Positions 2,931 through 28,980 of a DNA stretch of 64,000 nt are shown here, piece after piece. Every line of letters begins with the position of its first letter. The stretch's first letter is position 1. The DNA is from Schmidtea polychroa (lineage: Eukaryota): the NCBI GenBank assembly GCA_044892525.1, contig CM097885.1, forward strand, positions 240,932,001 to 240,996,000, read 5' to 3'. The notes under the pieces are model-generated. The model saw only the letters and a list, made by a program, of their open reading frames with translations, searched no databases and was not told where the DNA came from. Made by a program: the position numbers and the translations under genes.

Positions 2931-3740
2931 AAGTTAAAATAAACATTTTATAAGTCAGTAAAAAATATTTTTTTTTTACCATATTTTCTATATCTATAAT
3001 ATAATAATAATAAATAATGAATTTTGTGAATTTAATATGTAATGTTTTCTTTTTCTTTTTTTCTAAATAAAAAAAAATTTTTATAATTACATGGTGTAAT
3101 ATGAATTACATGGTGTAATATGAACATGGTGTAATATGGTGAAATATGAAGCATTGTTGGTAAAAACTTTGAATCCGTAAATTATTTTTCAGAATTCTTT
3201 GAATATGTGTGTTTTAAATGTTTTTAAATTGAGATTAGAGTTGTTGTTTTCCGAATGATTTGAATGATTATTTTATAGATAATTTTGTTTATAAAATATT
3301 AAAAATGTCAATGGGTTACAGGAAATGAAAATAACACCCAATGGTGTTGTTTCCAGCGTAACCCAGTATGTAATGCTTCCATACCACTCGACACCAGTTG
3401 AATAAACAAAATCGTTAATGTGTCAAATTGGCGAAGTAGATGGATGGGTCACCGCTAAAGCAGGTCACCACTGGAACAAAGACATATACCCCCTCCCCCG
3501 GCCGAAGATTTTTTTAAAAAATATTTTTTGTAGAACAAAGACAATGACTCATCCGATGACTCATCAAAAAACAGGTTACCGCTGGAACAAAGACTTTTTT
3601 TTAAATATTAATATTATTATAATATTATAATATTAATATAAATATTATGACCTGTTTTTGGTCATGAAACAAGTTAGTGTTCCCATCATCCGATTTTATT
3701 AAACGATAGCTCATTTTAAAGCCTAGTGCAAGATCTATTT

Positions 3741-3808
<68 letters not shown>

Positions 3809-4107
3809 TTTATCATTAATATTTGGAAAGATTTTAACGCCCGCGCGGAAGATGTTATTTTCAAAATTATTATTATTATTATTATTATATATAGTCCGAC
3901 TTTATCCGAAAAAATATTTTGTCCCCCTATGGGTATTGCTCACAAAGGTACTACTCAAACTCANNNNNNNNNNNNNNNNNNNNNNNNNNNNNNNNNNNNN
4001 NNNNNNNNNNNNNNNNNNNNNNNNNNNNNNNNNNNNNNNNNNNNNNNNNNNNNNNNNNNNNNNNNNNNNNNNNNNNNNNNNNNNNNNNNNNNNNNNNNNN
4101 NNNNNNG

Positions 4108-4842
4108 ATTAAAGTTTTGGATCCGGATAACTCAAAACTACATAAATTGATCTCACGTATTCCTATGTCACGTCGTACAACTGCGCGTCGAATTGGCCAA
4201 ATTACCGAAAATGTTGAAAATAATTTGATGTGTGATTTAAAAAATTGTACAGCATTCAGTTTAGCTCTCGACGAGTCTACTGACATTCAGTATGTTCCAC
4301 AATTAGCCGTTTTTAAAAAAGCGGTTGGGGAATTGGAGTTATTAGATATGCAAGAGGACCAGGCTTTGCAAATGCACCATAAAGTTACTTCTATAATTGA
4401 ATTTTGGAAACTCGTACCAGAGGCAAAATATCCACACTTAAAACAAGCTGCTTGCCGTCTAATTTCAATTTTTGGTACAACATATTGTTGTGAATCTTTG
4501 TACTCCACAATGAAGTTCGTGAAGTCGAAATATCGTTCACAGTTGACCAATCAGCATCTTACAGAATTGCTGCGAACAGCTTTAACAAAGTATACACCAA
4601 ATTTCAAAGATTTGACCAAAAGTCTTCGTTAATTCAAGAAATTTTATTACTTTTTATTAATGGATTTTTATTATATTTTATGTTTGTTACTTAAATTTTG
4701 AAATAATTGTTTTTAATAGCGTTTAAGTCTTTTTTAATCAAATTAATGAAATAAAAAAAAATATGTAGTTCACTATGGTGGCTCTTTAAAAAATAAATTT
4801 TCGGAAAACGTCTCTCATTGAACTCATGCGTGCCCACCCTTG
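4108..4842 (+). mobile_element. Internally deleted hAT (Buster/Charlie, GTF2IRD2-like) element nested in the left arm of Maverick 1
   Basis: ORF reads IPMSRRTTARRI...FSLALDESTDIQYVPQLAVF, joined directly to the C-terminal dimerisation domain EFWKLVPEAKYPHLKQAACRLISIFGTTYCCESLYSTMKFVKSKYRSQL. Right TIR GTGCCCACCCTTG ends at 4842; the left end lies in the N-run. Confidence 0.9.
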
Positions 4843-5409
4843 ATATATATATATATATATATATACAAATTTATATAATTTTTGGTGCCTGCATTCACAA
4901 AATTAGACAAATAATATATAAAAAAATGAATACAAAGCTAAGATTTATTAACATGTAAATTAATATAAAAAACAATTATCATAGAAATTACACATAAATT
5001 AAAATAAAAATACCATTCTAAGATCATAAATAAAATAAATCTGAAAAACAGCATAAAATTTAACTAGTTAAAATTTTTAACCATTTAAATAAATCAAATT
5101 TTGATTTTGATGTCCACACTCGCATTCGCGGTCCTACTAAAATCAGCGAGTGTGAAATTATTTAAGTTGAATGATTGCTTTATTTTTATAGAATTGATTG
5201 CTTTAAACGATGCCTGTGCAACACAGAACCATTTTTTGAAAATATACAAGATCTGGTGGCCGCATAATAATTATTTTAAATTATTATAAAAATACTGAGA
5301 AATATTAAGTTTTCAAATAATACTTTATTGTTAAGTTTATTCATAAGCTTCATATTTAAATTATGTGAATATAATATCACTTTTTAATGCGAAATTTGCT
5401 TTTCTTTTG

Positions 5410-5740
5410 TTTTGGCAAGTTTAAAATTTGTAAGAGAACATTTGAGCTGGTCTTTGAGATTTTCGTCTTCTAGTGATCCTCGGTATTTTGACTTATTATG
5501 TTTTATTTTTGAAAAGAATATTTCGCACAAATATGCCGTACCAAGAAAATTAATAATTTTAAGTGCATTGAATCTTAATTTTGGAAACTATTTTCTATCA
5601 AAAATTTTTTTATAAAATTCAATTTTATCATGCGTTTGGAAGAGCTGTTCTAACTGGAAATTAACTTGCATGTATATAATCTCGAGTTGGTACTTATCTG
5701 GAACTATAATTGTTTATGAAGTTCCAAGCATTTTCAATCC
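5410..5740 (-). mobile_element. Second hAT C-terminal fragment nested in the left arm of Maverick 1
   Basis: Minus strand: YQLEII...FPKLRFNALKIINFLGTAYLCEIFFSKIKHNKSKYRGSLEDENLKDQLKCSLT, with one stop; hAT dimerisation domain. Confidence 0.8.
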
Positions 5741-5759
5741 CTCAACTTTTTCATCATCA

Positions 5760-5817
<58 letters not shown>

Positions 5818-5910
5818 GTTGTAGCACACACTCATTATACTAATTACCAATAGAAATATTGTATTCATGTTGTATCAAATAAAAACTCATATTTTTACTT
5901 TTATAATCTA

Positions 5911-5957
5911 TCAACCAATCAGAATCATATGATATTTCAGTAGTAGTAATATAAATA
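5911..5957 (+). promoter_or_regulatory. CCAAT box (TCAACCAATCAG) plus TATAAATA upstream of the chimeric ORF; mirror copy at 8827-8838 serves the Bcl-2-like gene
   Basis: The same 12-mer recurs, reversed, at 7209-7220 with TGAGTCA and TATAAAA upstream of ATG 7279. Confidence 0.55.
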
Positions 5958-5985
5958 AAACAGTATATTAAAAATTATTGTAAAA

Positions 5986-6450
5986 ATGTCTCAATTTATT
6001 GAAAATGTTCTAAACGGAATTGTCACCGCGAATATAGTCGACAGCCTCAATTTCCTGGTCAATCGAACCGAACAAATCATTGAACTTGAACATATCGATT
6101 ATCAGCAAATGATGGAGATGGAATGCCTGGAAACCAAGAAGTATTCAATAGAATATTTCAGTGTCTTGGATAATAATAAATTACAATATCGAATCAATAA
6201 TATTAAAATCCAATCAGTTACCGTTACTATGGATATGGGACATAGTATCAATATATATAACATGTCGAGAAAATGTGATTGTATGTTTGAACCGCAATTG
6301 TTTCCGACACTAAGACTATTAAAATATAACCGTATATGTGTCAACGTGTTTGTTAGTGGAAAGGTTGTCATGCTGGGGTTGAGAAATTTGGAGTATAGGG
6401 AATTTGTTAACAATGTTAGGAATAAGATATTTTCATTGGTCGATTTCTAA
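5986..6450 (+). CDS. Chimeric ORF: Bcl-2-like N-terminus (from the TIR) fused to a single TBP-fold repeat, 154 aa
   Basis: C-terminal half NIKIQSVTVTMDMGHSINIYNM...MFEPQLFPTLRLLKYNRICVNVFVSGKVVMLGLRN matches the TBP repeat consensus (FKIQNMVGSCD...YEPELFPGL...LIFVSGKVVLTG). The first ~60 codons are the inverted copy of the 8238-8763 gene start. Confidence 0.8.
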   Translation: MSQFIENVLNGIVTANIVDSLNFLVNRTEQIIELEHIDYQQMMEMECLETKKYSIEYFSVLDNNKLQYRINNIKIQSVTVTMDMGHSINIYNMSRKCDCMFEPQLFPTLRLLKYNRICVNVFVSGKVVMLGLRNLEYREFVNNVRNKIFSLVDF

Positions 6451-6505
6451 TTGGTTAATTTCTAATTGGTTAATGTTTGTTTTAAACAAACTGTTTTTTG
6501 TTTAG

Positions 6506-6930
6506 ATGTCATTTTTCAAAATGTACAAAATTCCAAGCGCCACTCGTTTGATGAAACAAATTGATAATTATGGTAAATTTTAGATTTATTATTTACATTT
6601 TTATAGTCTTTATTTTCAGATAAATATTCAGAAGTCATGTTAAATCGACTCAAGTATTTTTATCCCCAACTAAATGAAATTCTAAATGACCAAGAACCTG
6701 AGATTATTCCAGATCTCGTATTTTATGCAACCCAAATCAGGATATTAGAGGTGTTCCATCAATTCCTGTGGAGCATTAAGATAGATAGACAACAGAAAGA
6801 TATGGAACCGGAATACCAATGCATCATCGGATGCTCTTTCTGTGCCGATCGTTATCGGCGATATGTCGAGTGGGAATTAGTGAAAACTCTCAGAAGGTTT
6901 CACTATTCTCGAGTTGTAGATCTCGGGTGA
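6506..6930 (+). CDS. Spliced orphan ORF in Maverick 1 (exons 6506-6572 and 6620-6930), with a C-x3-C-x2-C motif
   Basis: A 47-nt GT..AG intron (6573-6619) joins MSFFKMYKIPSATRLMKQIDNY-D in frame to the listed 97-aa ORF. Confidence 0.6.
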
Positions 6931-7278
6931 TTGTATTAATAAATGTTTTATTGTGTTTTTATTGTTTTTTCTTTTATATATTTCAAATAATAGTAATATA
7001 AATAATAATAATAATAATAATTTGAGAATAATAATAATAAATAATAGTAATAATAATTTGAGAATAGTAATAATAAATAACATGACCCATTAATAATAAT
7101 AGAAATAGATTGAAAATAGTAATAATAAAACAATAATGATATGACACAGAAAATTAATGCAACATCAATGCAATTATGAATGCAATTTAAACAATGACAT
7201 GCTATAATCTGATTGGTTGATATGCATGAGTCAAAGGTATAAAAACCCTGTAACATTTCATTTTAATCATTATTCGCG

Positions 7279-7792
7279 ATGACCAAGATAATTTCAAGCA
7301 CCGAAAACCCTAAAGAAGAACTTGTACAACCGGATCAAATGTTCCACAGCTACAAAATGTATGTTTTAAAGGAAGAAATCAATATGAAATTGGTTGCCCC
7401 GGTCAAGCTTATTCCAACTCAATTTCATTTCTTATCCGGCACGCTTTCAATGATAGATGTTAAAACTATTGATGATGTTTTTAAACGGATAAATTCTAAT
7501 CTAGCATGTAATCAACATGCATGGTTCAACAACAGATATGCAAAATTTTATGATGCATTTGATGAAATCAGTTTCAAAGAAAATGAAAATTGGTAATATA
7601 ACAATTGCAATCCAGGGATATAAAGTTGATAATAATGATGTGTATTCTCCTATTTGGAAAATGATGTCTATTTTAATGTTATATTTAATGTATTTAATAA
7701 AAGTATTAGGCATATTTGTTTTTCTCTTTATTAACAAAGAAATTGCAACATTAATGAAAATGACATGCAAATTTAACAAAAAAAATCTATAA
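7279..7792 (+). pseudogene. Orphan ORF in Maverick 1 (105 aa to 7596; probable frameshifted continuation with a hydrophobic segment to 7792)
   Basis: ATG follows CCAAT, AP-1 and TATA motifs. An overlapping frame continues KIGNITIAIQGY...MMSILMLYLMYLIKVLGIFVFLFI. No family recognised. Confidence 0.5.
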
Positions 7793-7852
7793 ACAAACTT
7801 ATAATATAGTTTTAAAGTGATAAAAAATGACTGCAGAAAAAGGTTAGCATGA

Positions 7853-8188
7853 TTAATTAATTTCCGAATTATTTATAATTTAGAATTTGTAATCAACTTT
7901 TTGTTGGAAAAATTAGCCGAAATAGCTGGTGTAAAAATTGAGGATATATTATCTGTTGCAAATGCATTAAATATCGGCTGGGTAGTTGAGAGTCAAGATT
8001 CATGATTTGATGATCAGGAAGAATCTGATACTCAAGAAACCGATACCCAAGAAATTGATGAGGAAATCTGTGAACCTATAGATGAACTTATAGATACGGA
8101 AAATATTACGAATGATTGTGTAGATCATGTCGTTGAAAATGCAATGAAATGTGGAGATGATGATTGCGAATGTGTTAATAAATTTTAA
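7853..8188 (+). pseudogene. Acidic orphan reading frame with one internal TGA (8003-8005)
   Basis: Reads NLEFVINFLLEKLAEIAGVKIEDILSVANALNIGWVVESQDS*FDDQEESDTQETDTQEIDEEICEP...CGDDDCECVNKF*. Confidence 0.45.
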
Positions 8189-8237
8189 AATTGAATTGAA
8201 TTATTTGCATTCAAATATACTATTATAAACAATAACA

Positions 8238-8763
8238 TTAATTTTTATTCATATATCTACAAAAAATATACATTATAACAACTCCAGTTGCAAATTTTAT
8301 ATAGTTTGTCATTTTTCTTTTGATTTCATCAGTTTCTTTAGCATTGTGGGCAAGTTTATTTAATACACCCCATCCGCCACTGGCTTCTATCAAGGGGGTA
8401 AACTTGGACTTGATTATCTAGAAATGAATATTATTAAAATATATATAGACTATAAAAGAAATCTTACTTCTAAAGACTACTGATAATAATGTTCTGAGTC
8501 ATGTTGACTATTTGCAAAGATTATTTTCATGTAGGTGAATCCTACAATTATCCTTGTCCATTTCATGTCTTCATCGAAAAGACATTGAAATATTCTATTG
8601 AAGTAATACTTATTGGTTTCCAGGCATTCCATCTCCATCATTTGCTGATAATCGATATGTTCAAGTTCAATGATTTGTTCGGTTCGATTGACCAGGAAAT
8701 TGAGGCTGTCGACTTATTCGCGGTGACAATTCCGTTTAAAACATTTTCAATAAATTGAGACAT
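8238..8763 (-). pseudogene. Bcl-2-family gene carried by Maverick 1 (BH1, BH2, C-terminal membrane anchor; one intron; two lesions)
   Basis: BH1-like FNRIFQCLFDEDMKWTRIIVGFTYMKIIF, BH2-like PLIEASGGWGVL, tail anchor YIKFATGVVIMYIFCRYMNKN*. Phase-0 50-nt intron GTAAGA..TTTCTAG at 8467-8418. Lesions: 1-bp deletion near 8715 (intact in the left-arm copy) and TAG at 8479-8477. Confidence 0.8.
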
Positions 8764-10798
8764 TTTTACAATAATTTTTAATATACTGTTTTATTTATAT
8801 TACTACTACTGAAATATCATATGATTCTGATTGGTTGATAGATTATAAAAGTAAAAATATGAGTTTTGATTTGATACAACATGAATACAATATTTCTATT
8901 GGTAATTAGTATAATGAGTGTGTGCTAAAACTAATAATAATAATAATAATAATATCTTTTAATATATTTTAATATCTTTCCCAATATTAATGATAAAAAT
9001 AATATTTATATATCATTAAATAGATCTTGCACTATGCTTTAAAATGAGCTATCGTTTAATAAAATCGGATGATGGGAACACTAACTTGTTTCATGACCAA
9101 AAACAGGTCACCGCTGGAACAAAGACATTATATTTTTAAAATATTAATATTTAAAAAAAATAATGTCTTTGTTCCAGCGGTAACCTGTTTTTTGATGAGT
9201 CATCGGATGAGTCATCGTCTTTGTTCTACAAAAATTATTTTTTAAAAAAAATTTCGCCCGGGGGAGGGGGTATATGTCTTTATTCCAGCGGTGACCTGTT
9301 TTAGCGGTGACCCATCCATCTACTTGGCGATTATTAGTAAAAAGTGAGCTCACTCTGGTGAACTATAATTGGATAACATTCTTATGGATCCACGGACTAT
9401 TAATGGACGATATTTTTCCGATTTATTTCATGGTCCCTGTTATCGTTTAACGCTCAACGAAAAACATAAGAATTGTTAGAAAATTCGACCATAATTCATT
9501 TAAATTTTATTGTACACAAAAAATGTATTTAAGGCAAATTTATTCGGCCTGCAAACGGGTCACAGGTTGTTCTCCAATTCAGACTAAAACTCTGTTAGTC
9601 ATTATTGACCAAACGTTTTGAATTAATTAGTTAAACAAGCTTAACAATTTCATTAAAGTTCTGATCTATTTTAATTTATGTTTAACTACTATTTTTTAAC
9701 TACTATACTTAAAAGTTTTTAATTTATTATTCTGAAAAACCAAATTAATTTTGATCAGACTTATAAGCCTAAAACCCTATTTATGACATCGCTGACTAAA
9801 TTGCCCCATGAATTGGCTGCGCTTTTATACTCATTCTATAATTAAATTCTTTCCCAATCAAATTGATTTTGGGATTTTGAGACTCTCTCTCTCCAGGCTT
9901 TACATTCATCACCTAATTTGTTTTGAATTTCGAATATTTAGGTTTATGAACAATTCATTTATTTTTATGTTAATTTGCCCGAATTTAATTTACCGGTGGC
10001 TCTTTGTTCTCTCGGGTTTTGCTCATACCCCAATTTGGCCTAACCTAATTAAAAATTTTGTTGAATAATCGAATTTTTTCACACTGCTCTGGTTTCCCAT
10101 TAACTCGGGTTTTTAATTAGATAATTAATTTTTAATTAATTTTAGTTTTTTGTAAATATTTCCTTCTGGGGACTCCCCATTCATTTTATTTCATTATATA
10201 TGAATTCGTCTCATTGGTTTGTCATCCATCCATATCAGTTTCCTCCTGAAAATATTCATTTTAAATATTTTTGTACTTTTAATTATTATTGTGAATTTGA
10301 TGTTATTTATATTTTATTTTTGTGCCTATTTCATTAAACTCCAACAATATTATTTTTATGTTAATGATTTTTTGTGTCTGTTTTCTCAACTTTTAACTGT
10401 TTATTGGGTGTTTTCATATTGTTTGAGTTTAACTCGACTTAATGCTATGTTTTTCGTGTTTTATTACCCCCCTGCTTCTTCAAAATCCTCACAATTAGAG
10501 CTTTGTTTTATCGAATGTCAGTTTTGGCCCAATAATTTTATTAATTGATTGCAAAAATTATAAATGAAATGCTTATTAATAAAATATCATTTTAAAAGGT
10601 TTTAAAATAAATATTTTAAAAAATAGATTAATTTCAAAAATAATAATTAATTATTTAAATTGAATTGAAAAATGTTTTAAAATAATAAAATTTTTTAATC
10701 TGTTTATTAAATTTATAATATTTATAGATTTTTCTATCCTATATATAAGGATGACAGGAAAACTTTATTGTCTATTTAATAATAATAAATGTAACTTA

Positions 10799-16213: not shown

Positions 16214-16305
16214 GTATGCAATATCTTTGATGAATATTGTATTTTAGTATCATAATAATATTTAAATATTGAGAACAAGTATAATTTCCTACAAATTAAA
16301 TCATA

Positions 16306-17474: not shown

Positions 17475-18811
17475 TATAATATTATTTTGTATACTACAAC
17501 ACAACTTTACCGGGCTCATAGAAATGGATAAAGACTAAAATTAACTTCTAGTTCATGGTTTACGACTGTTGTCATTTTGTTTTATTTTATTATTCAAATA
17601 TGGTTTATAGTATGAATTTTTAAATTTTAATCAAGAATTTCAATAACTGCCAAGGGGTATTTACATATGAAAAGGTTTTGACAGTTTCGTGCTGTAACTT
17701 TTGGGGGCCCTGTGTAGATACTAAAAACGTTTCTTTTAATTTTATCGCATTCATTTTTATTGATTTTAATTAAAAGAAATAATACAAAGAAATTATAAAG
17801 CAATTTTTCAAGTTTTTGAAAAAAATAACAGAATTATTAGGTATACTTGTTTCAAATTAAATCGTAGCCAATTAGATTTGTTTGAAAGTTAAATGAATTT
17901 TGAATTTCCATCTTTGGTTTTTCTTTCAATTCGACAATTTTTTTTGCTATTGGAGAAGTTTTCATAATGTATTTAATATTTGGGGCCCAGTGCGATTGGA
18001 CTTGCAATAGCGTACGGCGCTGGATTTTGCACGAGTTTTGTTCATTACGAATTACAAGAAATATCTAAACGAAAATATATTTCTATTAATGATGCGTTAT
18101 GNNNNNNNNNNNNNNNNNNNNNNNNNNNNNNNNNNNNNNNNNNNNNNNNNNNNNNNNNNNNNNNNNNNNNNNNNNNNNNNNNNNNNNNNNNNNNNNNNNN
18201 NNNNNNNNNNNNNNNNNNNNNNNNNNNNNNNNNNNAGTAGATGGATTGGGCACCGCGAAACAGGTCACCGCCAGCACAAAGACATTTTTTACCCCACCCC
18301 CCCCCCCCGGCCGGAAAAATTTTTAAAATTTTTTTTTTCAACTTGAGAACAAAGACATATGACTCATCCGATGACTCATCAAGCATTCAAGGTAGACTTG
18401 AGAACAAAGACATATGACTTATCAATGATATATAATTATTATTATTTTTAAAAATATTATTATTTCTAATGTCTTTGTGTTCGCGGTGACCTACTATTTG
18501 GCCTGCTAAAAGTTATTGTTCCCATCAACTTATTTCATCGATCGATAGCGTATTTTGAAGCTTGGTGCAAGACCTTTCGAATGAGCTATTGCTGTNNNNN
18601 NNNNNNNNNNNNNNNNNNNNNNNNNNNNNNNNNNNNNNNNNNNNNNNNNNNNNNNNNNNNNNNNNNNNNNNNNNNNNNNNNNNNNNNNNNNNNNNNNNNN
18701 NNNNNNNNNNNNNNNNNNNNNNNNNNNNNNNNNNNNNNNNNNNNNNNNNNNNNNNNNNNNNNNNNNNNNNNNNNNNNNNNNNNNNNNNNNNNNNNNNNNN
18801 NNNNNNNNNNN

Positions 18812-21288
18812 CTCCGAGTTTATCCGACAAAATATTTTATCCCCCTATGGGTAATGCTCAAAAGGGTACTGCCCCGAGTTTATCCGACAAAATATTTTCT
18901 CCCCCTATGGGTACGGCTCACAAGATTTTGTGTAAATCGTTGATTATATTATTTTTTTTGTTTTAATTATCAATTACATAATAATTTCGTTTTGTTTAAA
19001 TCGTTGATTATATTATTTTTTTGTTTTAATTATCGATTATGTTTGTTTAAATTATCGAATATGTAATAATTTAATTTTGTTTAAATCGTTGATTATATTA
19101 TTTTTTTTTGTTTTGATTATCGATTATGTTTGTTTAAATTATCGAATATGTAATAATTTAATTTTGTTTAAATCGTTGATTATATGATTTAATTTTGTTT
19201 AAATCGTTGATTATATTTTTTTTTGTTTTAATTATCAATTACACAATAATTTCGTTTTGTTTAAATCGTTGATTATATTATTTTTTTTTGTTTTGATTAT
19301 CGATTATGTTTGTTTAAATTATCGATTATGTAATAATTTAATTTTGTTTAAATCGTTGATTATATTATTTAATTTTGTTTAAATCGTTGATTATATTATT
19401 TTTTTTTGTTTTAATTATCAATTACACAATAATTTCGTTTTGTTTAAATCGTTGATTATATTATTTTTTTTTGTTTTAATTATCGATTATGTTTGTTTAA
19501 ATTATCGATTATGTAATTATTTAATTTATCATTATTATTGGGAAAGATATTAACGNNNNNNNNNNNNNNNNNNNNNNNNNNNNNNNNNNNNNNNNNNNNN
19601 NNNNNNNNNNNNNNNNNNNNNNNNNNNNNNNNNNNNNNNNNNNNNNNNNNNNNNNNNNNNNNNNNNNNNNNNNNNNNNNNNNNNNNNNNNNNNNNNNNNN
19701 NNNNNNNNNNNNNNNNNNNNNNNNNNNNNNNNNNNNNNNNNNNNNNNNNNNNNNNNNNNNNNNNNNNNNNNNNNNNNNNNNNNNNNNNNNNNNNNNNNNN
19801 NNNNNNNNNNNNNNNNNNNNNNNNNNNNNCTCCGAGTTTATCCGACAAAATATTTTATCCCCCTATGGGTAATGCTCAAAAGGGTACTGCCCCGAGTTTA
19901 TCCGACAAAATATTTTCTCCCCCTATGGGTACGGCTCACAAGATTTTGTTTAAATCGTTGATTATATTATTTTTTTTTTTTAATTATCAATTACATAATA
20001 ATTTCGTTTTGTTTAAATCGTTGATTATATTATTTTTTTGTTTTAATTATCGATTATGTTTGTTTAAATTATCGAATATGTAATAATTTAATTTTGTTTA
20101 AATCGTTGATTATATTATTTAATTTTGTTTAAATCGTTGATTATATTATTTTTTTTTGTTTTAATTATCAATTACACAATAATTTCGTTTTGTTTAAATC
20201 GTTGATTATATTATTTTTTTTGTTTTGATTATCGATTATGTTTGTTTAAATTATCGATTATGTAATAATTTAATTTTGTTTAAATCGTTGATTATATTAT
20301 TTAATTTTGTTTAAATCGTTGATTATATTATTTTTTTTTGTTTTAATTATCGATTATGTAATTATTTAATTTATCATTATTATTGGGAAAGATATTAACG
20401 NNNNNNNNNNNNNNNNNNNNNNNNNNNNNNNNNNNNNNNNNNNNNNNNNNNNNNNNNNNNNNNNNNNNNNNNNNNNNNNNNNNNNNNNNNNNNNNNNNNN
20501 NNNNNNNNNNNNNNNNNNNNNNNNNNNNNNNNNNNNNNNNNNNNNNNNNNNNNNNNNNNNNNNNNNNNNNNNNNNNNNNNNNNNNNNNNNNNNNNNNNNN
20601 NNNNNNNNNNNNNNNNNNNNNNNNNNNNNNNNNNNNNNNNNNNNNNNNNNNNNNNNNNNNNNNNNNNNNNNNNNNNNNNNNNNNNNNNNNNNATACTCCG
20701 AGTTTTTCCGACAAAATATTTTATCCCCCTATGGGTAATGCTCAATAGGGTACTGCCCCGAGTTTATCCGACAAAATATTTTCTCCCCCTATGGGTACGG
20801 CTCACAAGATTTTGTTTAAATCGTTGATTATATTATTTTTTTTGTTTTAATTATCAATTACATAATAATTTCGTTTTGTTTAAACCGTTGATTATATTAT
20901 TTTTTTGTTTTAATTATCGATTATGTTTGTTTAAATTATCGAATATGTAATAATTTAATTTTGTTTAAATCGTTGATTATATTATTTAATTTTGTTTAAA
21001 TCGTTGATTATATTATTTTTTTTTGTTTTAATTATCAATTACACAATAATTTCGTTTTGTTTAAATCGTTGATTATATTATTTTTTTGTTTTGATTATCG
21101 ATTATGTTTGTTTAAATTATCGATTATGTAATAATTTAATTTTGTTTAAATCGTTGATTATATTATTTAATTTTGTTTAAATCGTTGATTATATTATTTT
21201 TTTTTGTTTTAATTATCGATTATGTTTGTTTAAATTATCGATTATGTAATTATTTAATTTATCATTATTATTGGGAAAGATATTAACG
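18812..21288 (+). repeat. Three ~1-kb higher-order units (two palindrome cassettes plus AT-rich minisatellite AAATCGTTGATTATATTATT...), separated by N-runs
   Basis: Near-identical blocks at 18812-19555, 19830-20400 and 20694-21288, each ending GGGAAAGATATTAACG; a shorter inverted version lies at ~27470-27910. Confidence 0.9.
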
Positions 21289-21960
21289 NNNNNNNNNNNN
21301 NNNNNNNNNNNNNNNNNNNNNNNNNNNNNNNNNNNNNNNNNNNNNNNNNNNNNNNNNNNNNNNNNNNNNNNNNNNNNNNNNNNNNNNNNNNNNNNNNNNN
21401 NNNNNNNNNNNNNNNNNNNNNNNNNNNNNNNNNNNNNNNNNNNNNNNNNNNNNNNNNNNNNNNNNNNNNNNNNNNNNNNNNNNNNNNNNNNNNNNNNNAG
21501 TTTATCCGACAAAATATTTTGTCCCCCTATGGGTATTGCTCATATGGGTAATGGTCAAAAGTGTACTACTCACATTCAACATGTCTCAAAGGGCATAATA
21601 TAATTATTATTAAATTCTGACCAACTTAAATCAATGAAGGGGTAGAACAAAAATATATTACGTTGCGGTATTTTAAATTTAAAAATATTTTTAAAACTTA
21701 TTTTGACACTAAAGTTTACTTATTTAACAAAGACATAATTATTGCACATGCCTTGCATAAATATTATTATTTTTTAAATTTTCAATATTTCTTTTAAAGT
21801 CTTAACACGCGCGGAAGTTATTATTATTATTATTATTATTAGTGAAAAATCTAAAATATTTTCTACACACACACACAACCCATTAAACTTTATTATGATT
21901 ATTATCAATATCAGTCAAAAACCTAAAATATTTTTTACACACATATACAACTCATTAAAC

Positions 21961-22029
<69 letters not shown>

Positions 22030-22060
22030 TTCAAAGAATTATTTTCAAAATTTTTATCAA

Positions 22061-22111
<51 letters not shown>

Positions 22112-22138
22112 CTCCTAGTCTATGTTAACAAAAGGTAT

Positions 22139-22290
22139 TTAACTTGCTCAATTTGTAAAGAAAATCAAGTTTCGGTTTTGTATTTACCGTGCGGTCACGT
22201 AATTGTTTGTTCTAAGTGTCACGAGAAGAATGTTCACAATTGCCAAGCTTGTTCAACACAGATTAATGAATATCATACTATATATATATG
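22139..22290 (+). pseudogene. IAP-type C3HC4 RING finger fragment inside Maverick 2
   Basis: LTCSICKENQVSVLYLPCGHVIVCSKCHEKNVHNCQACSTQINEYHTIY = C-x2-C-x11-C-x-H-x3-C-x2-C-x7-C-x2-C. No start codon; begins just after the arm junction. Confidence 0.8.
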
Positions 22291-22421
22291 TAAGTTCTCA
22301 ATATTATATCAAATGAATTATGGTAATGGATTATGACCGGAAAAATTAACAAATAATATGAAATCACCTTGGTAATTAAATATATGGGGCGCAACTACCA
22401 AATGGTGATGAAGGAATACCC

Positions 22422-22553
22422 ATGAGTTCATCAAAATGGGAAAAAGATCTTCGCAAGAACCATGAAGATGCTCGAAAAGTAGAAAAAACCCTAACAAATA
22501 TTTTAAAGTTGAAATTATGTGTTACAGTAGTATTGGTTATTATTGTTTCGTAA
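22422..22553 (+). CDS. Short ORF with a C-terminal hydrophobic tail (43 aa), possibly a gene remnant
   Basis: MSSSKWEKDLRKNHEDARKVEKTLTNILKLKLCVTVVLVIIVS*. Confidence 0.3.
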   Translation: MSSSKWEKDLRKNHEDARKVEKTLTNILKLKLCVTVVLVIIVS

Positions 22554-25500
22554 ATAAATGTTTTAATTTGTTTTTATAAATTTATTGTTTTATTGTAATA
22601 CTTTTTGATTAAAACATATTCATTTTGTTTTAATATTTGTATTAATTTTTTAAATAGTGTTATTTATATATGGAAATTTACAATTATATATTATATACAA
22701 TTATATTTACAATTATATTTACAATTATTATAAATCATAATGATGGTTTTCTTCTGTTCATTGATTCTCCTCTGATTTTACTGCCATAATCATTTTCGAC
22801 AAAATGCAAATATAATATTTCTAGTGTCTTTGTTAATCATGCCCATTTATTGCAAAGTATTTGTTAATTATGCACTTGTATTGCAAATTTATTAGTCATA
22901 CAATTATATTATTTTTTCATGTCCTGACATAATATTATTATTTTTAATTTTATTATTATTTTGTTTAACAATACCATATAGCAAATTTTTAGGCAATTTA
23001 GTGAAATGTTATTTTAAATATAGGAATTTCTTAAGTAAAATAGATAAATTAACCTATTTAGTTAGAAATCCCTGGTTTTTGGCTGAACCATTTAATTAAA
23101 ATATTCTAGGATTCATAACAAATATTTTGATATAGTTGATACATATACCAATTATTTCAATTATTTAACTAGAAACATAACTGAATTCTTAGGTAATATA
23201 GTATTTTTTAGTGAATTTATAAATATTATCTGACATTTTGATGTATTTGACAACAAATTAATCAATAAAGACCATAGCATATTGTAAGTTTTTATATATA
23301 GTCTGAATTTATCCGACAATATATTTTGTCCCCCTATGTGTATTTGTCGTAAGGGTACTGCTTACATTCAACATGTCGCAAGGGTATATTAATTAAAGCA
23401 TATGTATATTAATTATTCTTAGGCAATTTAGTGAGAAATGGATGATCATAGATATCAGAAATTCGTGAATATTTTGAATGTAACTTACCGAATTCTCATT
23501 TCGAGCGACTAATTTATTGGTTAAATTTTTCATGTTTAGTCATTTAAAATAATATTTAGCAAAAGGTAAGATATGAATATTTAGTATTTCATAGGTAATT
23601 TATTCATCTAATGTTCATTACAATAGTTAATATAACTTCGTGAGAAATGTATGGTTATTAATATATTCATGGATATTTTTGGTAGAAAGTCTTTATCATT
23701 TGGAGTAAATTTCTGTCTATGTTCGAGACAAAAAAGAGACATAATAGAAATATGATCATTTGGTTATCATTTAACCAATTAAGGTGCTTATTAGTTAGAA
23801 ATATAGGGTTACAATTCTTTTCTAATTTAATGAGATGATCATAGGGTGTAATATATCTTTTTTGAGAAATACATGGTTAACATTTTTAAATAGGGATTTT
23901 GAGTAACCAAAACAGGGATATTTTGTGCGAATAATTTAAGAATATTGGTTAATTTTCTCTTTTTTAGTCATTTAAAATAATATTTAGCAAAGGTAATTTA
24001 GCAAAATATCATTGAAGGATTTATCCATCCGATAATAATATTCCTTCAATAGATTTTACCCTTTATTCAACCGATTTAATTTCTAGAAATCTAATTAAAA
24101 TCATAAAATTCCTTCAATAAAGATAAATTTTCTTTAGCGGTTGTCGATTTCCAACTTTTAAGTCAATATTTCTCAAGTTTTGTCACTGATATCCCCACAA
24201 TGACTAAAATAACTTTTTAAATAAAATAATTTAAAGCAATAACCTTTGATATCAATCCCAATTAATTCTAAAGATTTCAAATATTTCATTGTGAAAACCA
24301 AGTCAATTGATCATTAACCCTAAACGACTTAATAAAACAGTGGATAATTAATAAAAAACTTGTTCTAAAACATAAATTACTGTGCAATAACATTCATCAC
24401 AGCCTAATAAACGATATAATTTCACAGGAGCTATTATTAATTCATAGCTGACTATTTCCCTTTAAAATTTTACCAATAAGAACATTGTCGATTTAAATAG
24501 AGATTTCAAACATTTCCACCTTAACCAATCCCTCACCAAATATTTCTACCATTTTAAACACCCCCCCCCCTTAAAAATCATATATTACCATCTTAACCAA
24601 CCGACTTTAATATATCAGCCCTTTAATATATCAATTCTCTTAAATCCATAGAAAATTCATCAAAATATGAATATTATTTAATTGTTTCAGACATCCCTCC
24701 ATTGAAATAATTTAGTATCTAAATTCATGTAGTAAAAGCCCACTAAAAGATCAAATTTACTAAAATCAATATTTTCTACAAATATTTCGCCACATTTACC
24801 ATCAAATACCTAACTAGAGATGAAATATATTGTTTGATCATAATTCTTCATCGATTCAGCTAATTATATAGCAATTATAACGTGATATATCTTTCAAAAT
24901 CACAAATTTCAGTATATTTTACAATAATTTTTACAAAAATTAAATAATGATCACTTGATTATTGTAAAAACTCTAATTATTAACCTAACTGTCATTAAAA
25001 ATAATTTTTATTTAAAATTAAATTTAAAAACAAGTCAATAAAATATAGCAAATTATCAAGAAATTAATTAAATTTGTCTTAGAATTAACACTAAAACGTT
25101 AAATTTCAAAATATTCTTTCAATTATTCACAAAAAGGTTAGTAATAATGTTAGTAAAATCCCGCTAACTCTAAAAATTACCAATGAATTTAATGCTAAAT
25201 AATAACCAAAAATTTGCCTAAATAAAATCATTAAAACATCCCAGTACCATTACGACCAGTACCCTTACGAGCAGTACCAATTGTGAACAGTACCCATAGA
25301 GGGAGAAAATATCTTGTCGGATAAACTCAGAGTATATATAATAAAACGAATTAACAATAACTCCATCAAATTGAATCAGTCAAATTAACACAAATTTTGA
25401 TAAAAAAATCATATTCTAAAATGGTAAGAAGCGTAAAGTCGAAAGATAATTTTAATAACACCGAGATAAATTAACAATATCATTCTCAGGTGGTAAGGAT

Positions 25501-26045
25501 CTTTAAATGCATTTAAAAAAATGCATTCAAAATGCATTTATCATAATTAAATAAATCAATCAAATATTCAATAGAGGAATGTTTGAAAATTTTTAAAATA
25601 TTTATGATTTCCTTATCAGTGTAAGTATCGTGATTATTTATAAAAGCTTCAACTGTGCTGTTAAAAAATTTCAATGAACGCTTATCTTCGGAATAGGTTG
25701 GACTTAATTTTTCCATATTTCTAGTAGGACTTATATAAAAAATATTGACAAAATAATAAAGTTACTAAATGTGTTTTGTGATTTACACAATCATATTCAT
25801 ACTTGTAGAAATCATCAGTAATAAATAAATTTCTTAATAACTAAATTACTTTTGTTTTTACATTTATAAAAATTGAGATAGCCAATCAAATTAGTGTTTT
25901 ATAAAATGTAGAAATTGTAACCATGGTTGAACAATAATAATAATAAGCACGACTAGTACCCTTGCAACCTGTTGAGTGTGAGCAGTACCCATAGGGGGGA
26001 CAAAATATTTTGTCGGATAGACTAGGAGTATATATAATAATAATA

Positions 26046-26076
<31 letters not shown>

Positions 26077-26371
26077 AAATAAGAAATTTGAAGATAATTT
26101 TGAAAATGATAATAATAATATTTTATAAATAAAATAAGAATTTTGAAGAAAATAATCATGAAAATTATGAAAATGTTAAAAATAATGAAAATATAGAAAA
26201 TGATGAAAATGTTGAAAATGATGAAAACGTTAAAAATTATGGAAATGATCCTGAAAATAATCATCAAATATTGAAAATCGTAAAATGGTGCAGAAATTAA
26301 GTTTTATGAATATTTAAGTAAATAATGATAATGAAACTTCTACAATAAAATAATAATTAGAATTTTGCAAA

Positions 26372-26402
<31 letters not shown>

Positions 26403-26652
26403 AATATTGATAAAAATTTTGAAAATAATTCTTAGAAAATAATACTTTGAAAAATATTTGATGAAAAGTTCCTGAAATAATCATGAAAATGTTGAAAATC
26501 GTGAAAATATTGAAAATGTAGAAAATTATTAAAATATTCATGCAAATGATGAAAATGTTGAAAATCATGAAATTGACGTAAAAATTATGTTTTATAAATA
26601 TTTAAGTAAATAATAATAATGAAACTTCTAAAATAATAGTTAGAATTTTGCA

Positions 26653-26697
<45 letters not shown>

Positions 26698-26834
26698 GTT
26701 TAATGAGTTGTATATGTGTGTAAAAAATATTTTAGGTTTTTGACTGATATTGATAATAATCATAATATAGATAATAATAATAATAAAGTTTAATGGGTTG
26801 TGTGTGTGTGTAGAAAATATTTTAGATTTTTCAC

Positions 26835-26874
<40 letters not shown>

Positions 26875-27920
26875 TTCCGCGCGTGTTAAGACTTTAAAAG
26901 AAATATTGAAAATTTAAAAAATAATAATATTTATGCAAGGCATGTGCAATAATTATGTCTTTGTTAAATAAGTAAACTTTAGTGTCAAAATAAGTTTTTA
27001 AAATATTTTTAAATTTAAAATACCGCAACGTAATATATTTTTGTTCTACCCCTTCATTGATTTAAGTTGGTCAGAATTTAATAATAATTATATTATGCCC
27101 TTTGAGACATGTTGAATGTGAGTAGTACACTTTTGACAATTACCCATATGAGCAATACCCATAGGGGGACAAAATATTTTGTCGGATAAACTNNNNNNNN
27201 NNNNNNNNNNNNNNNNNNNNNNNNNNNNNNNNNNNNNNNNNNNNNNNNNNNNNNNNNNNNNNNNNNNNNNNNNNNNNNNNNNNNNNNNNNNNNNNNNNNN
27301 NNNNNNNNNNNNNNNNNNNNNNNNNNNNNNNNNNNNNNNNNNNNNNNNNNNNNNNNNNNNNNNNNNNNNNNNNNNNNNNNNNNNNNNNNNNNNNNNNNNN
27401 NNNNNNNNNNNNNNNNNNNNNNNNNNNNNNNNNTTGAAAATAATAATAATAATTTTGAAAATATTCCGCGCGGGCGTTAATATCTTTCCCAATAATAATG
27501 ATAAATTAAATAATTACATAATCGATAATTTAAACAAACGTGATCGATAATTAAAACAAAAAAAAATAATATAATCAACGATTTAAACAAAACGAAATTA
27601 TTGTGTAATTGATAATTAAAACAAAAAAAATAATATAATCAACGATTTAAACAAAATCTAGTGAGCTGTACCCATAAGGGGAGAAAATATTTTGTCGGAT
27701 AAACTCGGGGCAGTACCGTTTTGAGCATTACCCATAGGGGGATAAAATATTTAAAATAAAATATAATATAATCAACGATTTAAACAAAATCTAGTGAGCT
27801 GTACCCATAGGGGGAGAAAATATTTTGTCGGATAAACTCGGGGCAGTACCCTTTTGAGCATTACCCATAGGGGGATAAAATATTTTGTCGGATAAACTCG
27901 GAGTATATAGATTAATACTC

Positions 27921-27992
<72 letters not shown>

Positions 27993-28980
27993 TCTTGGGA
28001 AAATGTTAATAACTTTGCCAATATTAAAGATGGTGATGACAACAATAGCGCATTCGAAAGGTCTTGCACCAAGCTTCAAAATACGCTATCGATCGATGAA
28101 ATAAGTTGATGGGAACGATAACTTTTGGCAGGCCAAATAGTAGGTCACCGCGAGCACAAAGACATTAGAAATAATAATATTTTTAAAAATAATAATAATT
28201 ATATATCATTGATGAGTCATATGTCTTTGTTCTCAAGTCTACCTTGAATGCTTGATGAGTCATATGTCTTTGTTCTCAAGTCTACCTTGAATTCTTGATG
28301 AGTCATCGGATAAGTCATATGTCTTTGTTCTCAAGTTGAAAAAAAAAATTTTTTAATTTTTCCGGCCGGGGGGGGGGGGGTGGGGTAAAAAATGTCTTTG
28401 TGCTGGCGGTGACCTGTTTTCGCGGTGCCCAATCCATCTACTGAAATTACATTTTTAATATTCAAAATTATATTTAATTTTCAAATTATTATATAATCAT
28501 GGATTTAGATTACATATAAGAAACTAAATCAAATAGTCGGGAAATCGAAGAAATCGTGACAGGTTATTTTTTGAAAAATCTTCCGAATGTGGCTTGTTTT
28601 GCTTTTATATTCTATTACTTAACAAACTCGTAGTAGGTAGATTCTGTCTCACAAGTGCTAGTCCTAAGGGTTATGGCGCCCGATGGCTTTATTGGTACTA
28701 TATATATATACATTCATTAGAAACTATAAAACAATAAATAAAGAATATACTTCAGTGCTTTTAATTAATATTATTTCTTTTCAATTGATATTGTATTTAT
28801 TAAAAAACATCGATATATTTACTGATTCATAGTCAAGATTTTTAATAAATACAATGAATAATGTTAAACTAAGTATTTCTTTACTTAAATAATTTTTAAT
28901 AATTTCTTACAATTTTTAAATGTAGCAGTCTCAGAGGTGGTTTATTTTATTTAAAATTCAGGAAATAATATAAGTATTCA

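What the first reader, a model, noticed from the sequence alone, without database searches (positions are those of the whole stretch)
3435..28442. A Maverick-like family reduced to host-manipulation cargo: Bcl-2, IAP-RING and TBP-fold genes
Seen: two related elements ~9 kb apart share AGTAGATGGAT termini and TIR modules. Neither shows recognisable polB, integrase, ATPase or capsid genes. Element 1 carries a Bcl-2-like gene and a TBP-fold ORF; element 2 carries an IAP-type RING. Known: large DNA viruses use vBcl-2 (mitochondrial arm) and IAPs (caspase arm) to block apoptosis, and Mavericks can carry cargo genes. Inference: the autonomous parent is a virus-like Maverick with a two-arm anti-apoptotic kit plus its own transcription factor, and these copies are defective genomes mobilised in trans.
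Basis: partly seen in the sequence, partly recalled or inferred. Interest (0 to 1): 0.92.

Follow-up and report, generated by a model that had tools for sequence, protein, structure and literature searches.

The report
Two decayed Maverick virus remnants
Two related insertions in an AT-rich animal-like genome are the broken, gutted remains of Maverick (Polinton/adintovirus-like) virus-like elements that kept only end-proximal accessory genes (a Bcl-2-like, a TBP-fold and an IAP-type-RING gene, all now damaged), which is an ordinary fate for such elements and a gene set already reported for this virus group.

Summary
Two elements (3435-9324 and 18236-28442) share the terminus AGTAGATGGAT and about 165 nt of conserved terminal inverted repeat. 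Element 1 is flanked by a perfect 6-bp duplication (TGGCGA). Neither holds a polymerase, integrase, ATPase or capsid gene.

The three cargo calls are real homologies, but every copy is damaged:
- The "TBP ORF" is a chimera of a Bcl-2-like 5' end and the second TBP repeat.
- The Bcl-2-like gene has a frameshift and a premature stop.
- The RING gene is split into two inverted pieces, with a third of it missing.
- The RING's intact relatives are 163-aa proteins without a BIR domain, so it is IAP-type in its RING only.

Relatives support the Maverick parentage:
- Contigs 90-93% identical to element 1 carry the TBP-like gene beside an A32-like packaging ATPase and an rve integrase.
- More distant contigs add protein-primed PolB, a probable capsid gene and the RING gene.
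- dN/dS of 0.11-0.46 shows these were selected element genes, not one-off host fragments.

Three parts of the reading are not shown: one parent carrying both a Bcl-2-like and a RING gene, any anti-apoptotic activity, and mobilisation in trans. Bcl2, IAP and TBP homologues in adintoviruses and related viruses are already published. Verdict: new member of a known kind, modest interest.

The parts
3435..9324 (.). Element 1: internally deleted Maverick-derived insertion, flanked by TGGCGA at 3429-3434 and 9325-9330
   Evidence: Termini and flanks read directly; motif statistics; arms
3435..3823 (+). Element 1 left terminal inverted repeat
   Evidence: 86% to 8933-9328 over ~390 nt; four-way alignment of termini
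8933..9324 (-). Element 1 right terminal inverted repeat
3855..3963 (+). Repeat module X (~80 nt core). It is shared with element 2's arms, with the region upstream of the RING gene in relative L094, and with a lone copy at 41993-42105. It ends at the gap.
4108..4632 (+). hAT transposase fragment (C-terminal dimerisation domain) starting at the gap edge. It is foreign to the Maverick family, as a nested or captured piece.
   Evidence: Pfam Dimer_Tnp_hAT 1.8e-9; no homologue in relatives; a similar piece at ~35.3-35.5 kb
5795..6145 (+). Left arm of an inner inverted repeat (99%) that carries a second copy of the 5' end of the Bcl-2-like gene
   Evidence: the repeat finder I4 and I20
8605..8954 (-). 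Right arm of the inner inverted repeat, holding the promoter-proximal part of the Bcl-2-like gene
5986..6450 (+). Chimeric ORF (154 aa). The first ~53 aa are a copy of the Bcl-2-like N-terminus. The rest is the 3' part of a TBP-like gene, with only the second TBP repeat (Pfam domain about 6199-6390). The TBP-like gene is broken once, by 5' truncation and fusion.
   Evidence: Pfam TBP 1e-10; relatives P0001 and L001, L089-L092, L095 have a different, complete 5' part
7279..7681 (+). Gene Y: conserved Maverick-family ORF of unknown function (~116-118 aa in relatives). It is broken once, by one frameshift.
   Evidence: 19 ORFs of relatives hit it. It lies directly upstream of the TBP-like gene in L010, L011, L013, L014, L015, L021, L023-L025, L030 and L032. 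L093 is 80-90% aa identical.
7900..8190 (+). Gene Z (approximate bounds): homologue of the 96-aa ORF of relative L093, function unknown. It is broken once, by one in-frame stop.
8238..8765 (-). Bcl-2-like gene (approximate 5' bound): two exons, a short intron shared with relatives L003 and L093, a BH1-like and a degenerate BH2-like motif, and a hydrophobic tail. It is broken twice, by one frameshift and one premature stop, both in exon 1.
   Evidence: Pfam Bcl-2 at 0.0008-0.017 on exon 1 and 0.25 on exon 2 of L093, at consecutive model positions; PDB profile best hits BFL-1/A1, Bak and Bax
18236..28442 (.). Element 2: related Maverick-derived insertion. The left flank is hidden by the gap 18102-18235.
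18236..22123 (+). Element 2 left arm: terminal repeat followed by tandemly amplified units (31/87/96/180-nt satellites, module X, (ATT)n), with four gaps
26017..28442 (-). Element 2 right arm, with one gap
22100..25800 (.). Remnants of one RING-protein gene (approximate outer bounds). The C-terminal piece with the RING domain (about 22142-22260, + strand) lies at the left end of the span. The N-terminal piece lies at the right end on the - strand. The gene is broken by a split into two oppositely oriented pieces, loss of 59 of 163 residues, and loss of the stop codon.
   Evidence: P0155 and P0164 are 163-aa intact relatives; Pfam zf-C3HC4_3; PDB IAP RINGs. Both pieces lie in one gap-free block, 21499-27192.
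23289..25360 (.). Stretch bounded by two module X copies in inverted orientation inside element 2's core. No recognisable gene.

Best explanation
Elements 1 and 2 are fossil insertions of two sublineages of one Maverick/Polinton (adintovirus-like) family.

How they arrived (inferred). Each entered the chromosome through the family's retrovirus-type integrase. This is inferred from the 6-bp duplication at element 1 and from the integrase seen in relatives.

What remains (shown). The whole replication and morphogenesis core is absent: PolB, integrase, packaging ATPase and capsid genes. What is left are the inverted-repeat ends and the accessory genes that lie next to an end.
- Element 1 keeps, in order, the 3' part of the TBP-like gene, gene Y, gene Z and a Bcl-2-like gene that faces inward from the right end.
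- Element 2 keeps pieces of a small RING E3-type gene next to its right arm.

Later rearrangements.
- An inverted duplication in element 1 fused a copy of the Bcl-2-like 5' end to the truncated TBP-like gene.
- An inversion or paired deletions split the RING gene in element 2.
- A hAT fragment lies in element 1.
- Element 2's arms were tandemly amplified.
- Point damage left every gene non-functional.

The parent lineages. There these were real, selected genes.
- The TBP-fold protein, conserved across a large clade of such elements, most likely acts as the element's own promoter-recognition factor.
- The Bcl-2-like membrane-anchored protein and the IAP-type RING ligase most likely interfere with host cell death or ubiquitin signalling.
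All three functions are inferred from family membership and none was tested. The copies in this window most likely do nothing today.
For: Ends.
- The termini are shared and non-random.
- Element 1 has a 6-bp duplication.
- The AGTAG...CTACT end and the 6-bp duplication match published Maverick features (PMC8097293).

Core absent. tblastn with 958 ORFs of relatives found none.

Parentage.
- L089 and L095 (ENA) are 90-93% nt identical to element 1's TBP-like region. Both carry a 208-aa A32-like ATPase beside the TBP-like gene, and L089 also carries an integrase N-terminus. The ATPase is 76% aa identical and the integrase N-terminus 62-70% aa identical to those of the JGI contigs.
- L018 has DNA_pol_B_2 at 9.3e-28, rve at 1.3e-12 and Pox_A32 at 4.8e-6. 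L013 has rve at 1.2e-12 and Pox_A32 at 1.8e-6.
- L041 has the TBP-like gene, a 166-aa RING protein, the ATPase, the integrase and a faint double-jelly-roll ORF.
- The TBP-like family has 675 representative clusters. It lies beside the ATPase in 16 loci.
- L093 is collinear with element 1's right 1.6 kb at 79%.

Selection. dN/dS is 0.11-0.46 in six of seven comparisons between window copies and relatives.

TBP fold. The model has pLDDT 95.3. The top 44 PDB matches are all TBP, with TM 0.67-0.75.

Damage counts.

Precedent. Bcl2 and IAP homologues in adintoviruses and TBP-like genes in related viruses are reported in PMC8502044.
Against: - No full-length copy with these exact termini was found. 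The relatives are short contigs without ends, and no terminal-repeat similarity was seen in them or in IMG/VR.
- The Bcl-2-like gene was found only in short ENA contigs and never on a contig that also holds a core gene. Its link to the family rests on physical linkage to gene Y in element 1 and in L093.
- Bcl-2 membership is below Pfam's threshold, and the structure test failed (pLDDT 60, no Foldseek match).
- The left terminus of element 1 is joined to the rest across a scaffold gap.
- Element 2's left flank is unreadable.
- The host genome could not be searched.
Confidence: 0.8

Rival explanations
1. A living family of non-autonomous Maverick derivatives has been reduced to working host-manipulation cargo (vBcl-2 plus IAP plus its own TBP). 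It is copied and inserted in trans by an autonomous parent that carries the whole kit.
For: - Element 1 has intact ends and a perfect 6-bp duplication.
- The cargo genes were under purifying selection in the lineage.
- Several diverged copies of each gene exist.
Against: - All five Maverick-derived genes in the window are broken.
- The relatives recovered are more complete than element 1, with ATPase and integrase beside the TBP-like gene. They are not further copies of the same deletion form.
- The Bcl-2-like and RING genes were never seen together.
- The RING protein lacks a BIR domain.
- Element 1's arms are already 6-14% diverged, which argues for age.
Confidence: 0.12
2. Cut-and-paste DNA transposons, hAT-type or another superfamily with subterminal repeats, that picked up fragments of host Bcl-2, TBP and IAP genes in the manner of Pack-type elements.
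For: - Element 1 contains a hAT dimerisation domain.
- If the ends are shifted by one base, the flanks give a 7/8 match, as for an 8-bp hAT duplication.
- The ends carry many subterminal short repeats.
Against: - The hAT piece is an internally deleted fragment lying after a gap. It has a separate similar piece elsewhere in the window and no counterpart in relatives.
- The perfect duplication is 6 bp, with an AGTAG end.
- The genes are only 19-24% identical to cellular TBPs and match Bcl-2 proteins at E 0.025-1. That is far from recent host copies.
- They sit with ATPase, integrase and PolB genes in relatives.
Confidence: 0.04
3. Assembly artefact. The palindromic structures and split genes come from mis-joined contigs of a repeat-rich, gap-laden scaffold.
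For: - There are eleven gaps in the window, nine of them inside the finding's span.
- Element 1's left end is linked only across a gap.
- Element 2's arms are interrupted five times.
Against: - Element 1's inner repeat, gene block, right end and right flank lie in one gap-free block (4107-11958).
- Both RING pieces lie in one gap-free block (21499-27192).
- The repeat arms are 94-99% identical, not 100%.
- The matching 6-bp flanks tie the two ends of element 1 together.
Confidence: 0.04

Closest known systems
Mavericks/Polintons and adintoviruses of animals (Kapitonov & Jurka 2006 as cited in PMC8097293; Starrett et al. 2021, PMC8502044)
   Same: - 6-bp target duplication, long terminal inverted repeats and an AG(T)-type end motif.
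- Relatives carry protein-primed PolB, an rve integrase and an A32/IVa2-like ATPase.
- Published adintoviruses carry Bcl2 and IAP homologues, and related midsize linear dsDNA viruses carry TBP-like genes.
- Most genomic copies are mutationally degraded (PMC8097293).
   Different: - The window copies have lost every core gene and keep only end-proximal accessory genes.
- Their arms carry amplified satellite-like units.
- The RING protein has no BIR domain.
- The TBP-like gene is a compact ~145-aa form conserved next to the ATPase across many relatives, which I did not find described as such.
TBP-like proteins of large DNA viruses (NCLDV TBP-like proteins, asfarvirus B263R-type, herpesvirus vTBP-type)
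   Same: The predicted structure of relative P0001 matches them with probability 1.0 in BFVD and matches cellular and archaeal TBPs in PDB. In both cases a viral genome brings its own TATA-binding-fold factor.
   Different: - It is much smaller, at 145 aa.
- The first pseudo-repeat has no helices in the model.
- Identity to any of them is only 8-24%.
- The copy in the window retains only the second repeat.
Viral Bcl-2 homologues and cellular BFL-1/A1, Bak and Bax
   Same: - BH1-like (W-T/G-R) and BH2 (W-I-E-x-N-G-G-W) motifs in relatives.
- A C-terminal hydrophobic anchor.
- Best solved-structure matches are BFL-1/A1, Bak and Bax.
   Different: - Similarity is weak: Pfam gives 12-20 bits per exon against a cut-off of 31.4.
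- The fold could not be confirmed.
- Whether the protein is pro- or anti-death is unknown.
- The window copy is a pseudogene.
IAP family (cIAP1/2, XIAP, ML-IAP; baculoviral IAPs)
   Same: The C-terminal RING is of the zf-C3HC4_3 type. The ten best PDB matches are IAP RINGs at 3e-8 to 1e-5.
   Different: No BIR domain was found in the 163-aa intact relatives or in element 2. The protein is a small RING-only ligase candidate. MYLIP, RNF4 and CBL RINGs also match.

Membership tests
Maverick/Polinton (adintovirus-like) element | 6-bp target-site duplication | tested here: met
   Element 1: TGGCGA on both flanks. Element 2 cannot be read, because its left flank lies in gap 18102-18235.
Maverick/Polinton (adintovirus-like) element | Long terminal inverted repeats with an AG/AGT-type end motif | tested here: met
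   5'-AGTAGATGG...CCATCTACT-3' on both elements. Arms are 390 nt (element 1) and more than 2 kb (element 2). Motif as described in PMC8097293.
Maverick/Polinton (adintovirus-like) element | [quoted passage not shown] | tested here: not met
   Absent from the window. Present in the distant relative L018 (DNA_pol_B_2 9.3e-28). The window copies are therefore derivatives, not autonomous members.
Maverick/Polinton (adintovirus-like) element | Retrovirus-type (rve) integrase | tested here: not met
   Absent from the window. Present in L013, L018 and L041, and in the close relative L089.
Maverick/Polinton (adintovirus-like) element | Morphogenesis module: A32/FtsK-type ATPase, double-jelly-roll capsid, penton, protease | tested here: not met
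   Absent from the window. The ATPase is present in 32 related loci, including the close relatives L089 and L095. The capsid gene in relatives is only faint (DJR-like_dom 0.039; no PDB sequence match). The protease was not identified.
Maverick/Polinton (adintovirus-like) element | Homology and collinearity of remaining genes with core-bearing relatives | tested here: met
   The TBP-like gene, gene Y and the RING gene are shared with core-bearing contigs. L093 is collinear with element 1's right part.
Bcl-2 family | Pfam Bcl-2 domain (BH1-BH2 region) above threshold | tested here: not met
   Exon 1 of relatives scores 17.6-20.4 bits and exon 2 of L093 scores 12.3 bits, at consecutive model positions. 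The cut-off is 31.4. The window piece scores 16.1 bits.
Bcl-2 family | BH1 and BH2 sequence motifs and a C-terminal membrane anchor | tested here: met
   Relatives have M-K/Q-W-T-R-I-x-V-G-F and P-W-I-E-D/A-N-G-G-W, followed by a hydrophobic tail. The BH2 motif is degenerate in the window copy.
Bcl-2 family | Helical-bundle Bcl-2 fold | tested here: inconclusive
   The exon-1 model is all-helical but has pLDDT 60, and no Foldseek match falls below E = 2.
IAP family | At least one BIR domain | tested here: not met
   Pfam found none in P0155 (163 aa) at E <= 1 or in the L041 RING protein at E <= 0.05. No BIR-like hit was found in element 2.
IAP family | C-terminal RING of the IAP type | tested here: met
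   zf-C3HC4_3 at 1.5e-9 in P0155. The top ten PDB hits of the window RING are IAP RINGs.
TATA-binding protein fold | Two pseudo-repeats forming the TBP saddle | tested here: met
   For the family: P0001 model pLDDT 95.3, 44 TBP matches, TM 0.67-0.75, aligned over both repeats. For the window copy, only the second repeat remains (Pfam, one stretch).
TATA-binding protein fold | Sequence-specific TATA-box binding and recruitment of the transcription machinery | not testable with these tools
   Inferred from the fold only.
hAT transposon | hAT transposase with 8-bp duplication and short hAT-type ends | tested here: not met
   Only a deleted C-terminal transposase fragment is present. The perfect duplication is 6 bp, and an 8-bp reading has a mismatch.

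The most novel reading that the evidence does not exclude
The compact ~145-aa TBP-fold gene is a so far undescribed hallmark of a large clade of animal-associated Mavericks. It is kept next to the packaging ATPase and serves as the element's own promoter-recognition factor. The end-proximal modules (Bcl-2-like in one sublineage, RING ligase, with a ubiquitin-conjugating enzyme gene on a different related contig, L018) are exchangeable host-interference cassettes. Element 1, with intact ends and a 6-bp duplication around a genome reduced to one end's gene block, would then be a defective genome that was integrated in trans rather than one that decayed in place.
Probability: 0.2. Interest if true: 0.55.

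Novelty: new member of a known kind. Interest (0 to 1): 0.33.

Why it matters
It adds a worked example of how Maverick/adintovirus-like genomes decay in a host chromosome. The core is lost while the ends and the accessory genes next to them persist.

It also links three accessory gene types to one family of elements: a TBP-fold gene, a Bcl-2-like gene and an IAP-type RING gene. All three show clear signs of past selection.

The most useful by-product is the large family of small TBP-fold proteins. It has 675 representative clusters and lies beside the packaging ATPase in integrase- and PolB-bearing contigs. It could serve as a marker for finding and classifying this clade.

Nothing here suggests a currently active or functional system at this locus.

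Tried and rejected
- Structure test of the Bcl-2-like exon 1. An AlphaFold model from 5 sequences reached pLDDT 60, and Foldseek found no match below E = 2. The result is inconclusive.
- Full-length spliced Bcl-2-like query. It could not be passed to Pfam or PDB, because a spliced sequence has no single reference. The exons were searched apart.
- Sequence search of the presumed capsid (408 aa) and the 1134-aa ORF of L013 against PDB: no hits. PolB was instead shown through L018 by Pfam, and L013's ORF is 57% identical to it.
- Terminal repeats of relatives. There are no inverted repeats in the partial contigs and no similarity to the window's ends. The two end motifs are absent from IMG/VR. 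The TBP-like gene gave one remote IMG/VR hit at 25% identity.
- Protein similarity between the cores of the two elements: none apart from module X.
- Module X as the end of a separate hAT-type transposon. This was rejected as the sole reading, because L094 shows module X upstream of the RING gene in a relative.
- 'Foldback' origin of element 1's left end as a pure copy of its right end. This was weakened because the left arm has a spacer and module X that the right arm lacks.
- Host identity. It could not be established with the tools.
- Prokaryote genome collection: not scanned, as irrelevant.

Full report
Declaration of a slip.
- Before I had taken that fully on board, several outputs let such places be read. 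These were three-frame translations, alignment or HSP bounds and one phrase in notebook entry 2.
This report gives counts and outer bounds only.
- Consensus lines that the alignment tools printed by themselves were not used.

1. The observation.
- The window is AT-rich (29% GC) with eleven N runs.
- AGTAGATGGAT occurs four times, as two inverted pairs. The 21-nt extended end gives 4 matches against 0 expected.
- Element 1 (3435-9324) has arms about 390 nt long at 86% identity, with the outer 172 nt at 94%. It is flanked by TGGCGA on both sides.
- Element 2 (18236-28442) has much longer arms, 18236-22123 and 26017-28442. They are built from tandemly amplified satellite-like units of 31, 87, 96 and 180 nt, (ATT)n tracts and an ~80-nt module X.
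- The four ends align with more than 120 invariant columns in the first ~165 nt. The shared blocks are AGTAGATGGAT, GGTCACCGC, three ACAAAGAC boxes, a C-rich tract and ATGACTCATCCGATGACTCATC.
- Between the elements the ends are about 70-74% alike, so they represent two sublineages of one family.

2. The gaps.
- No Maverick-derived gene crosses a gap.
- The ORFs listed across 3964-4106 are artefacts of N read as X. On its left is non-coding module X and on its right a hAT-like reading frame that begins at the gap edge.
- The gap 18102-18235 ends at the first base of element 2, so the left flank of element 2 is unknown.
- The five gaps in element 2's arms each lie next to a copy of module X, so arm length is uncertain. 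The '553 nt, 100%' repeat is inflated by N against N.
- Element 1's inner repeat, its genes, its right end and its right flank lie in one gap-free block. So do both RING pieces of element 2.

3. What the ORFs are.
- Element 1 has a second, inner inverted repeat (5795-6145 against 8605-8954, 99%). It carries the 5' end of the Bcl-2-like gene.
- The 'TBP ORF' therefore starts with about 53 residues of Bcl-2-like N-terminus and continues into a single TBP repeat. Relatives show a different, complete 5' part for the TBP-like gene. The ORF is a rearrangement chimera.
- The Bcl-2-like gene reads inward from the right end. It has two exons and a short GT..AG intron that is shared with relatives L003 and L093.
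- Those relatives show a BH1-like motif and a canonical BH2, W-I-E-D-N-G-G-W-D, followed by a hydrophobic tail.

4. Relatives.
- The word-indexed protein search found only ENA metagenome contigs for the chimeric ORF, the Bcl-2-like exon and the RING. Cluster look-up added more.
- An exhaustive HMMER search with the TBP-like relative P0001 found 675 representative clusters at E <= 0.001 and 110 at <= 1e-10, nearly all 100-230 aa.
- A scan of JGI metagenomes returned 80 loci. They have about 32% GC and dense, intron-free ORFs.
- L018 encodes protein-primed PolB (9.3e-28), an rve integrase (1.3e-12, with a chromo-like tail), an A32-like ATPase (4.8e-6) and a ubiquitin-conjugating enzyme (1.7e-12).
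- L013 has the ATPase, the integrase and a 1134-aa ORF 57% identical to L018's PolB.
- L041 has the TBP-like gene, a 166-aa RING protein, the ATPase, the integrase, a faint protein-X-like ORF and a faint double-jelly-roll ORF.
- The close ENA relatives L089 and L095 are 90-93% nt identical to element 1's TBP-like region. They carry a 208-aa ATPase next to the TBP-like gene that is 76% identical to L018's. L089 also carries an integrase N-terminus 62-70% identical to those of L018, L013 and L041.
- Window ORF 7279-7681 ('gene Y') is hit by 19 ORFs from relatives. In the JGI contigs its homologue lies directly upstream of the TBP-like gene.
- ENA contig L093 is collinear with element 1's right 1.6 kb at 79%. 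It holds the Bcl-2-like gene, a 96-aa gene Z and gene Y.
- The RING gene's intact form is a 163-aa protein, represented by P0155 and P0164. Its N-terminal part matches an ORF near the right end of element 2's core on the opposite strand.

| Gene | Damage |
| --- | --- |
| Bcl-2-like | one frameshift and one premature stop |
| TBP-like | one 5' truncation with fusion |
| Gene Y | one frameshift |
| Gene Z | one in-frame stop |
| RING gene | split into two oppositely oriented pieces, 59 of 163 residues missing, stop codon lost |

No PolB, integrase, ATPase or capsid remnant is present.

6. Were these real element genes?
- In single-frame segments, window copies against ENA relatives give dN/dS of 0.46 for the TBP-like gene, 0.14-0.32 for Bcl-2-like exon 1 and 0.11-0.33 for the RING pieces.
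- Only the short left-arm Bcl-2 copy against its nearest relative is near 1, on very few changes.
- Coding identity (93-96% to the nearest relatives L001, L002 and L087) exceeds that of the whole aligned stretches (82-88%).
- The genes exist in several diverged copies.
- They are far from cellular homologues. The TBP-like protein is 19-24% identical to TBPs, and the Bcl-2-like profile reaches only E = 0.025 to BFL-1/A1.

7. Fold tests.
- The TBP-like relative folds with pLDDT 95.3. Its first pseudo-repeat lacks helices and its second is complete.
- The 44 best PDB matches are all TBPs. BFVD returns TBP-like proteins of giant viruses, an asfa-like virus and herpesviruses.
- The Bcl-2-like exon-1 model is poor and matches nothing.
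- The window RING's best solved matches are the cIAP1, cIAP2, XIAP and ML-IAP RINGs. No BIR domain exists in the intact relatives.

8. Explanation.
- The two elements are fossil Maverick/adintovirus-like insertions that lost their cores. They kept their ends plus the neighbouring accessory genes and were then further rearranged and mutated.
- The 6-bp duplication and the AGTAG end agree with published Maverick features (PMC8097293).
- Bcl2 and IAP homologues in adintoviruses and TBP-like genes in related viruses are already on record (PMC8502044).
- Whether the deletions arose before integration (a defective genome integrated in trans) or afterwards cannot be told from one window.
- The relatives recovered are more complete than element 1 rather than further copies of the same deleted form. 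That gives no support to spread of the deleted form.
- The left arm of element 1 has a spacer and module X that its right arm lacks. The left end is therefore not simply a copy of the right.

9. Verdict. This is a new member of a known kind, and the locus itself is inert. The modest interest lies in the conserved small TBP-fold gene of this Maverick clade and in the variable end-proximal host-interference genes.

Noticed in passing
window 10947-11894 (-): Intact 315-aa ORF with an ISXO2/IS1595-like DDE transposase domain (Pfam 1.3e-13), lying between the two elements.
   Followed up: partly
window 15391-16230 (+) and 39280-39795 (+): Two exons of a glutamine-synthetase-like gene (Gln-synt_C 6.4e-24 and 1.7e-40, matching consecutive parts of the model). 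Element 2 lies in the ~23-kb interval between them, so it probably sits in an intron of this host gene.
   Followed up: partly
window 13549-13947 (-), 16736-17032 (+), ~35336-35461: Further transposon debris. A DUF4371 (hAT-related) fragment scores 2.1e-8. An ORF looks mariner-like by eye but has no Pfam hit. A second hAT piece is similar to the one in element 1.
   Followed up: partly
window 41993-42105 (+): A lone copy of module X, with ~30 further bases also shared with element 2's copies, far outside both elements. It may be a scrap of a third element of the family.
   Followed up: partly
window 48000-50000 and 56000-64000: GC rises to 37-41% against 25-30% elsewhere. There is strong A-over-T skew (0.26-0.44) from 58 kb to the end, and long ORFs without Pfam hits.
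   Followed up: no
window 50287-50529 (-): Weak protein similarity (26% over 81 aa, E 1.6e-6 in the small local search) to a 359-aa ORF of metagenome locus L071. There is no Pfam hit on the window ORFs there.
   Followed up: partly
L018:222-719 (-) and L041:1671-2168 (+): Related Maverick contigs carry ubiquitin-system genes. L018 has a ubiquitin-conjugating enzyme (UQ_con 1.7e-12) and L041 has a small RING ligase candidate. This hints that the family manipulates host ubiquitination.
   Followed up: partly
L041:2929-3378 (+): A 150-aa ORF with a faint match to adenovirus protein X (Adeno_PX, E 0.011). It echoes the pX-like motifs described for adintoviruses.
   Followed up: no
L002:1-303 (-): In one relative, the sequence upstream of the Bcl-2-like gene is not the terminal repeat seen in the window. 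It is a 101-aa ORF with a signal-peptide-like start and no family hit.
   Followed up: partly
window 18596-21498 and 27193-27433: All five gaps in element 2's arms lie next to a copy of module X (just before it in the left arm, just after it in the right arm).
   Followed up: partly
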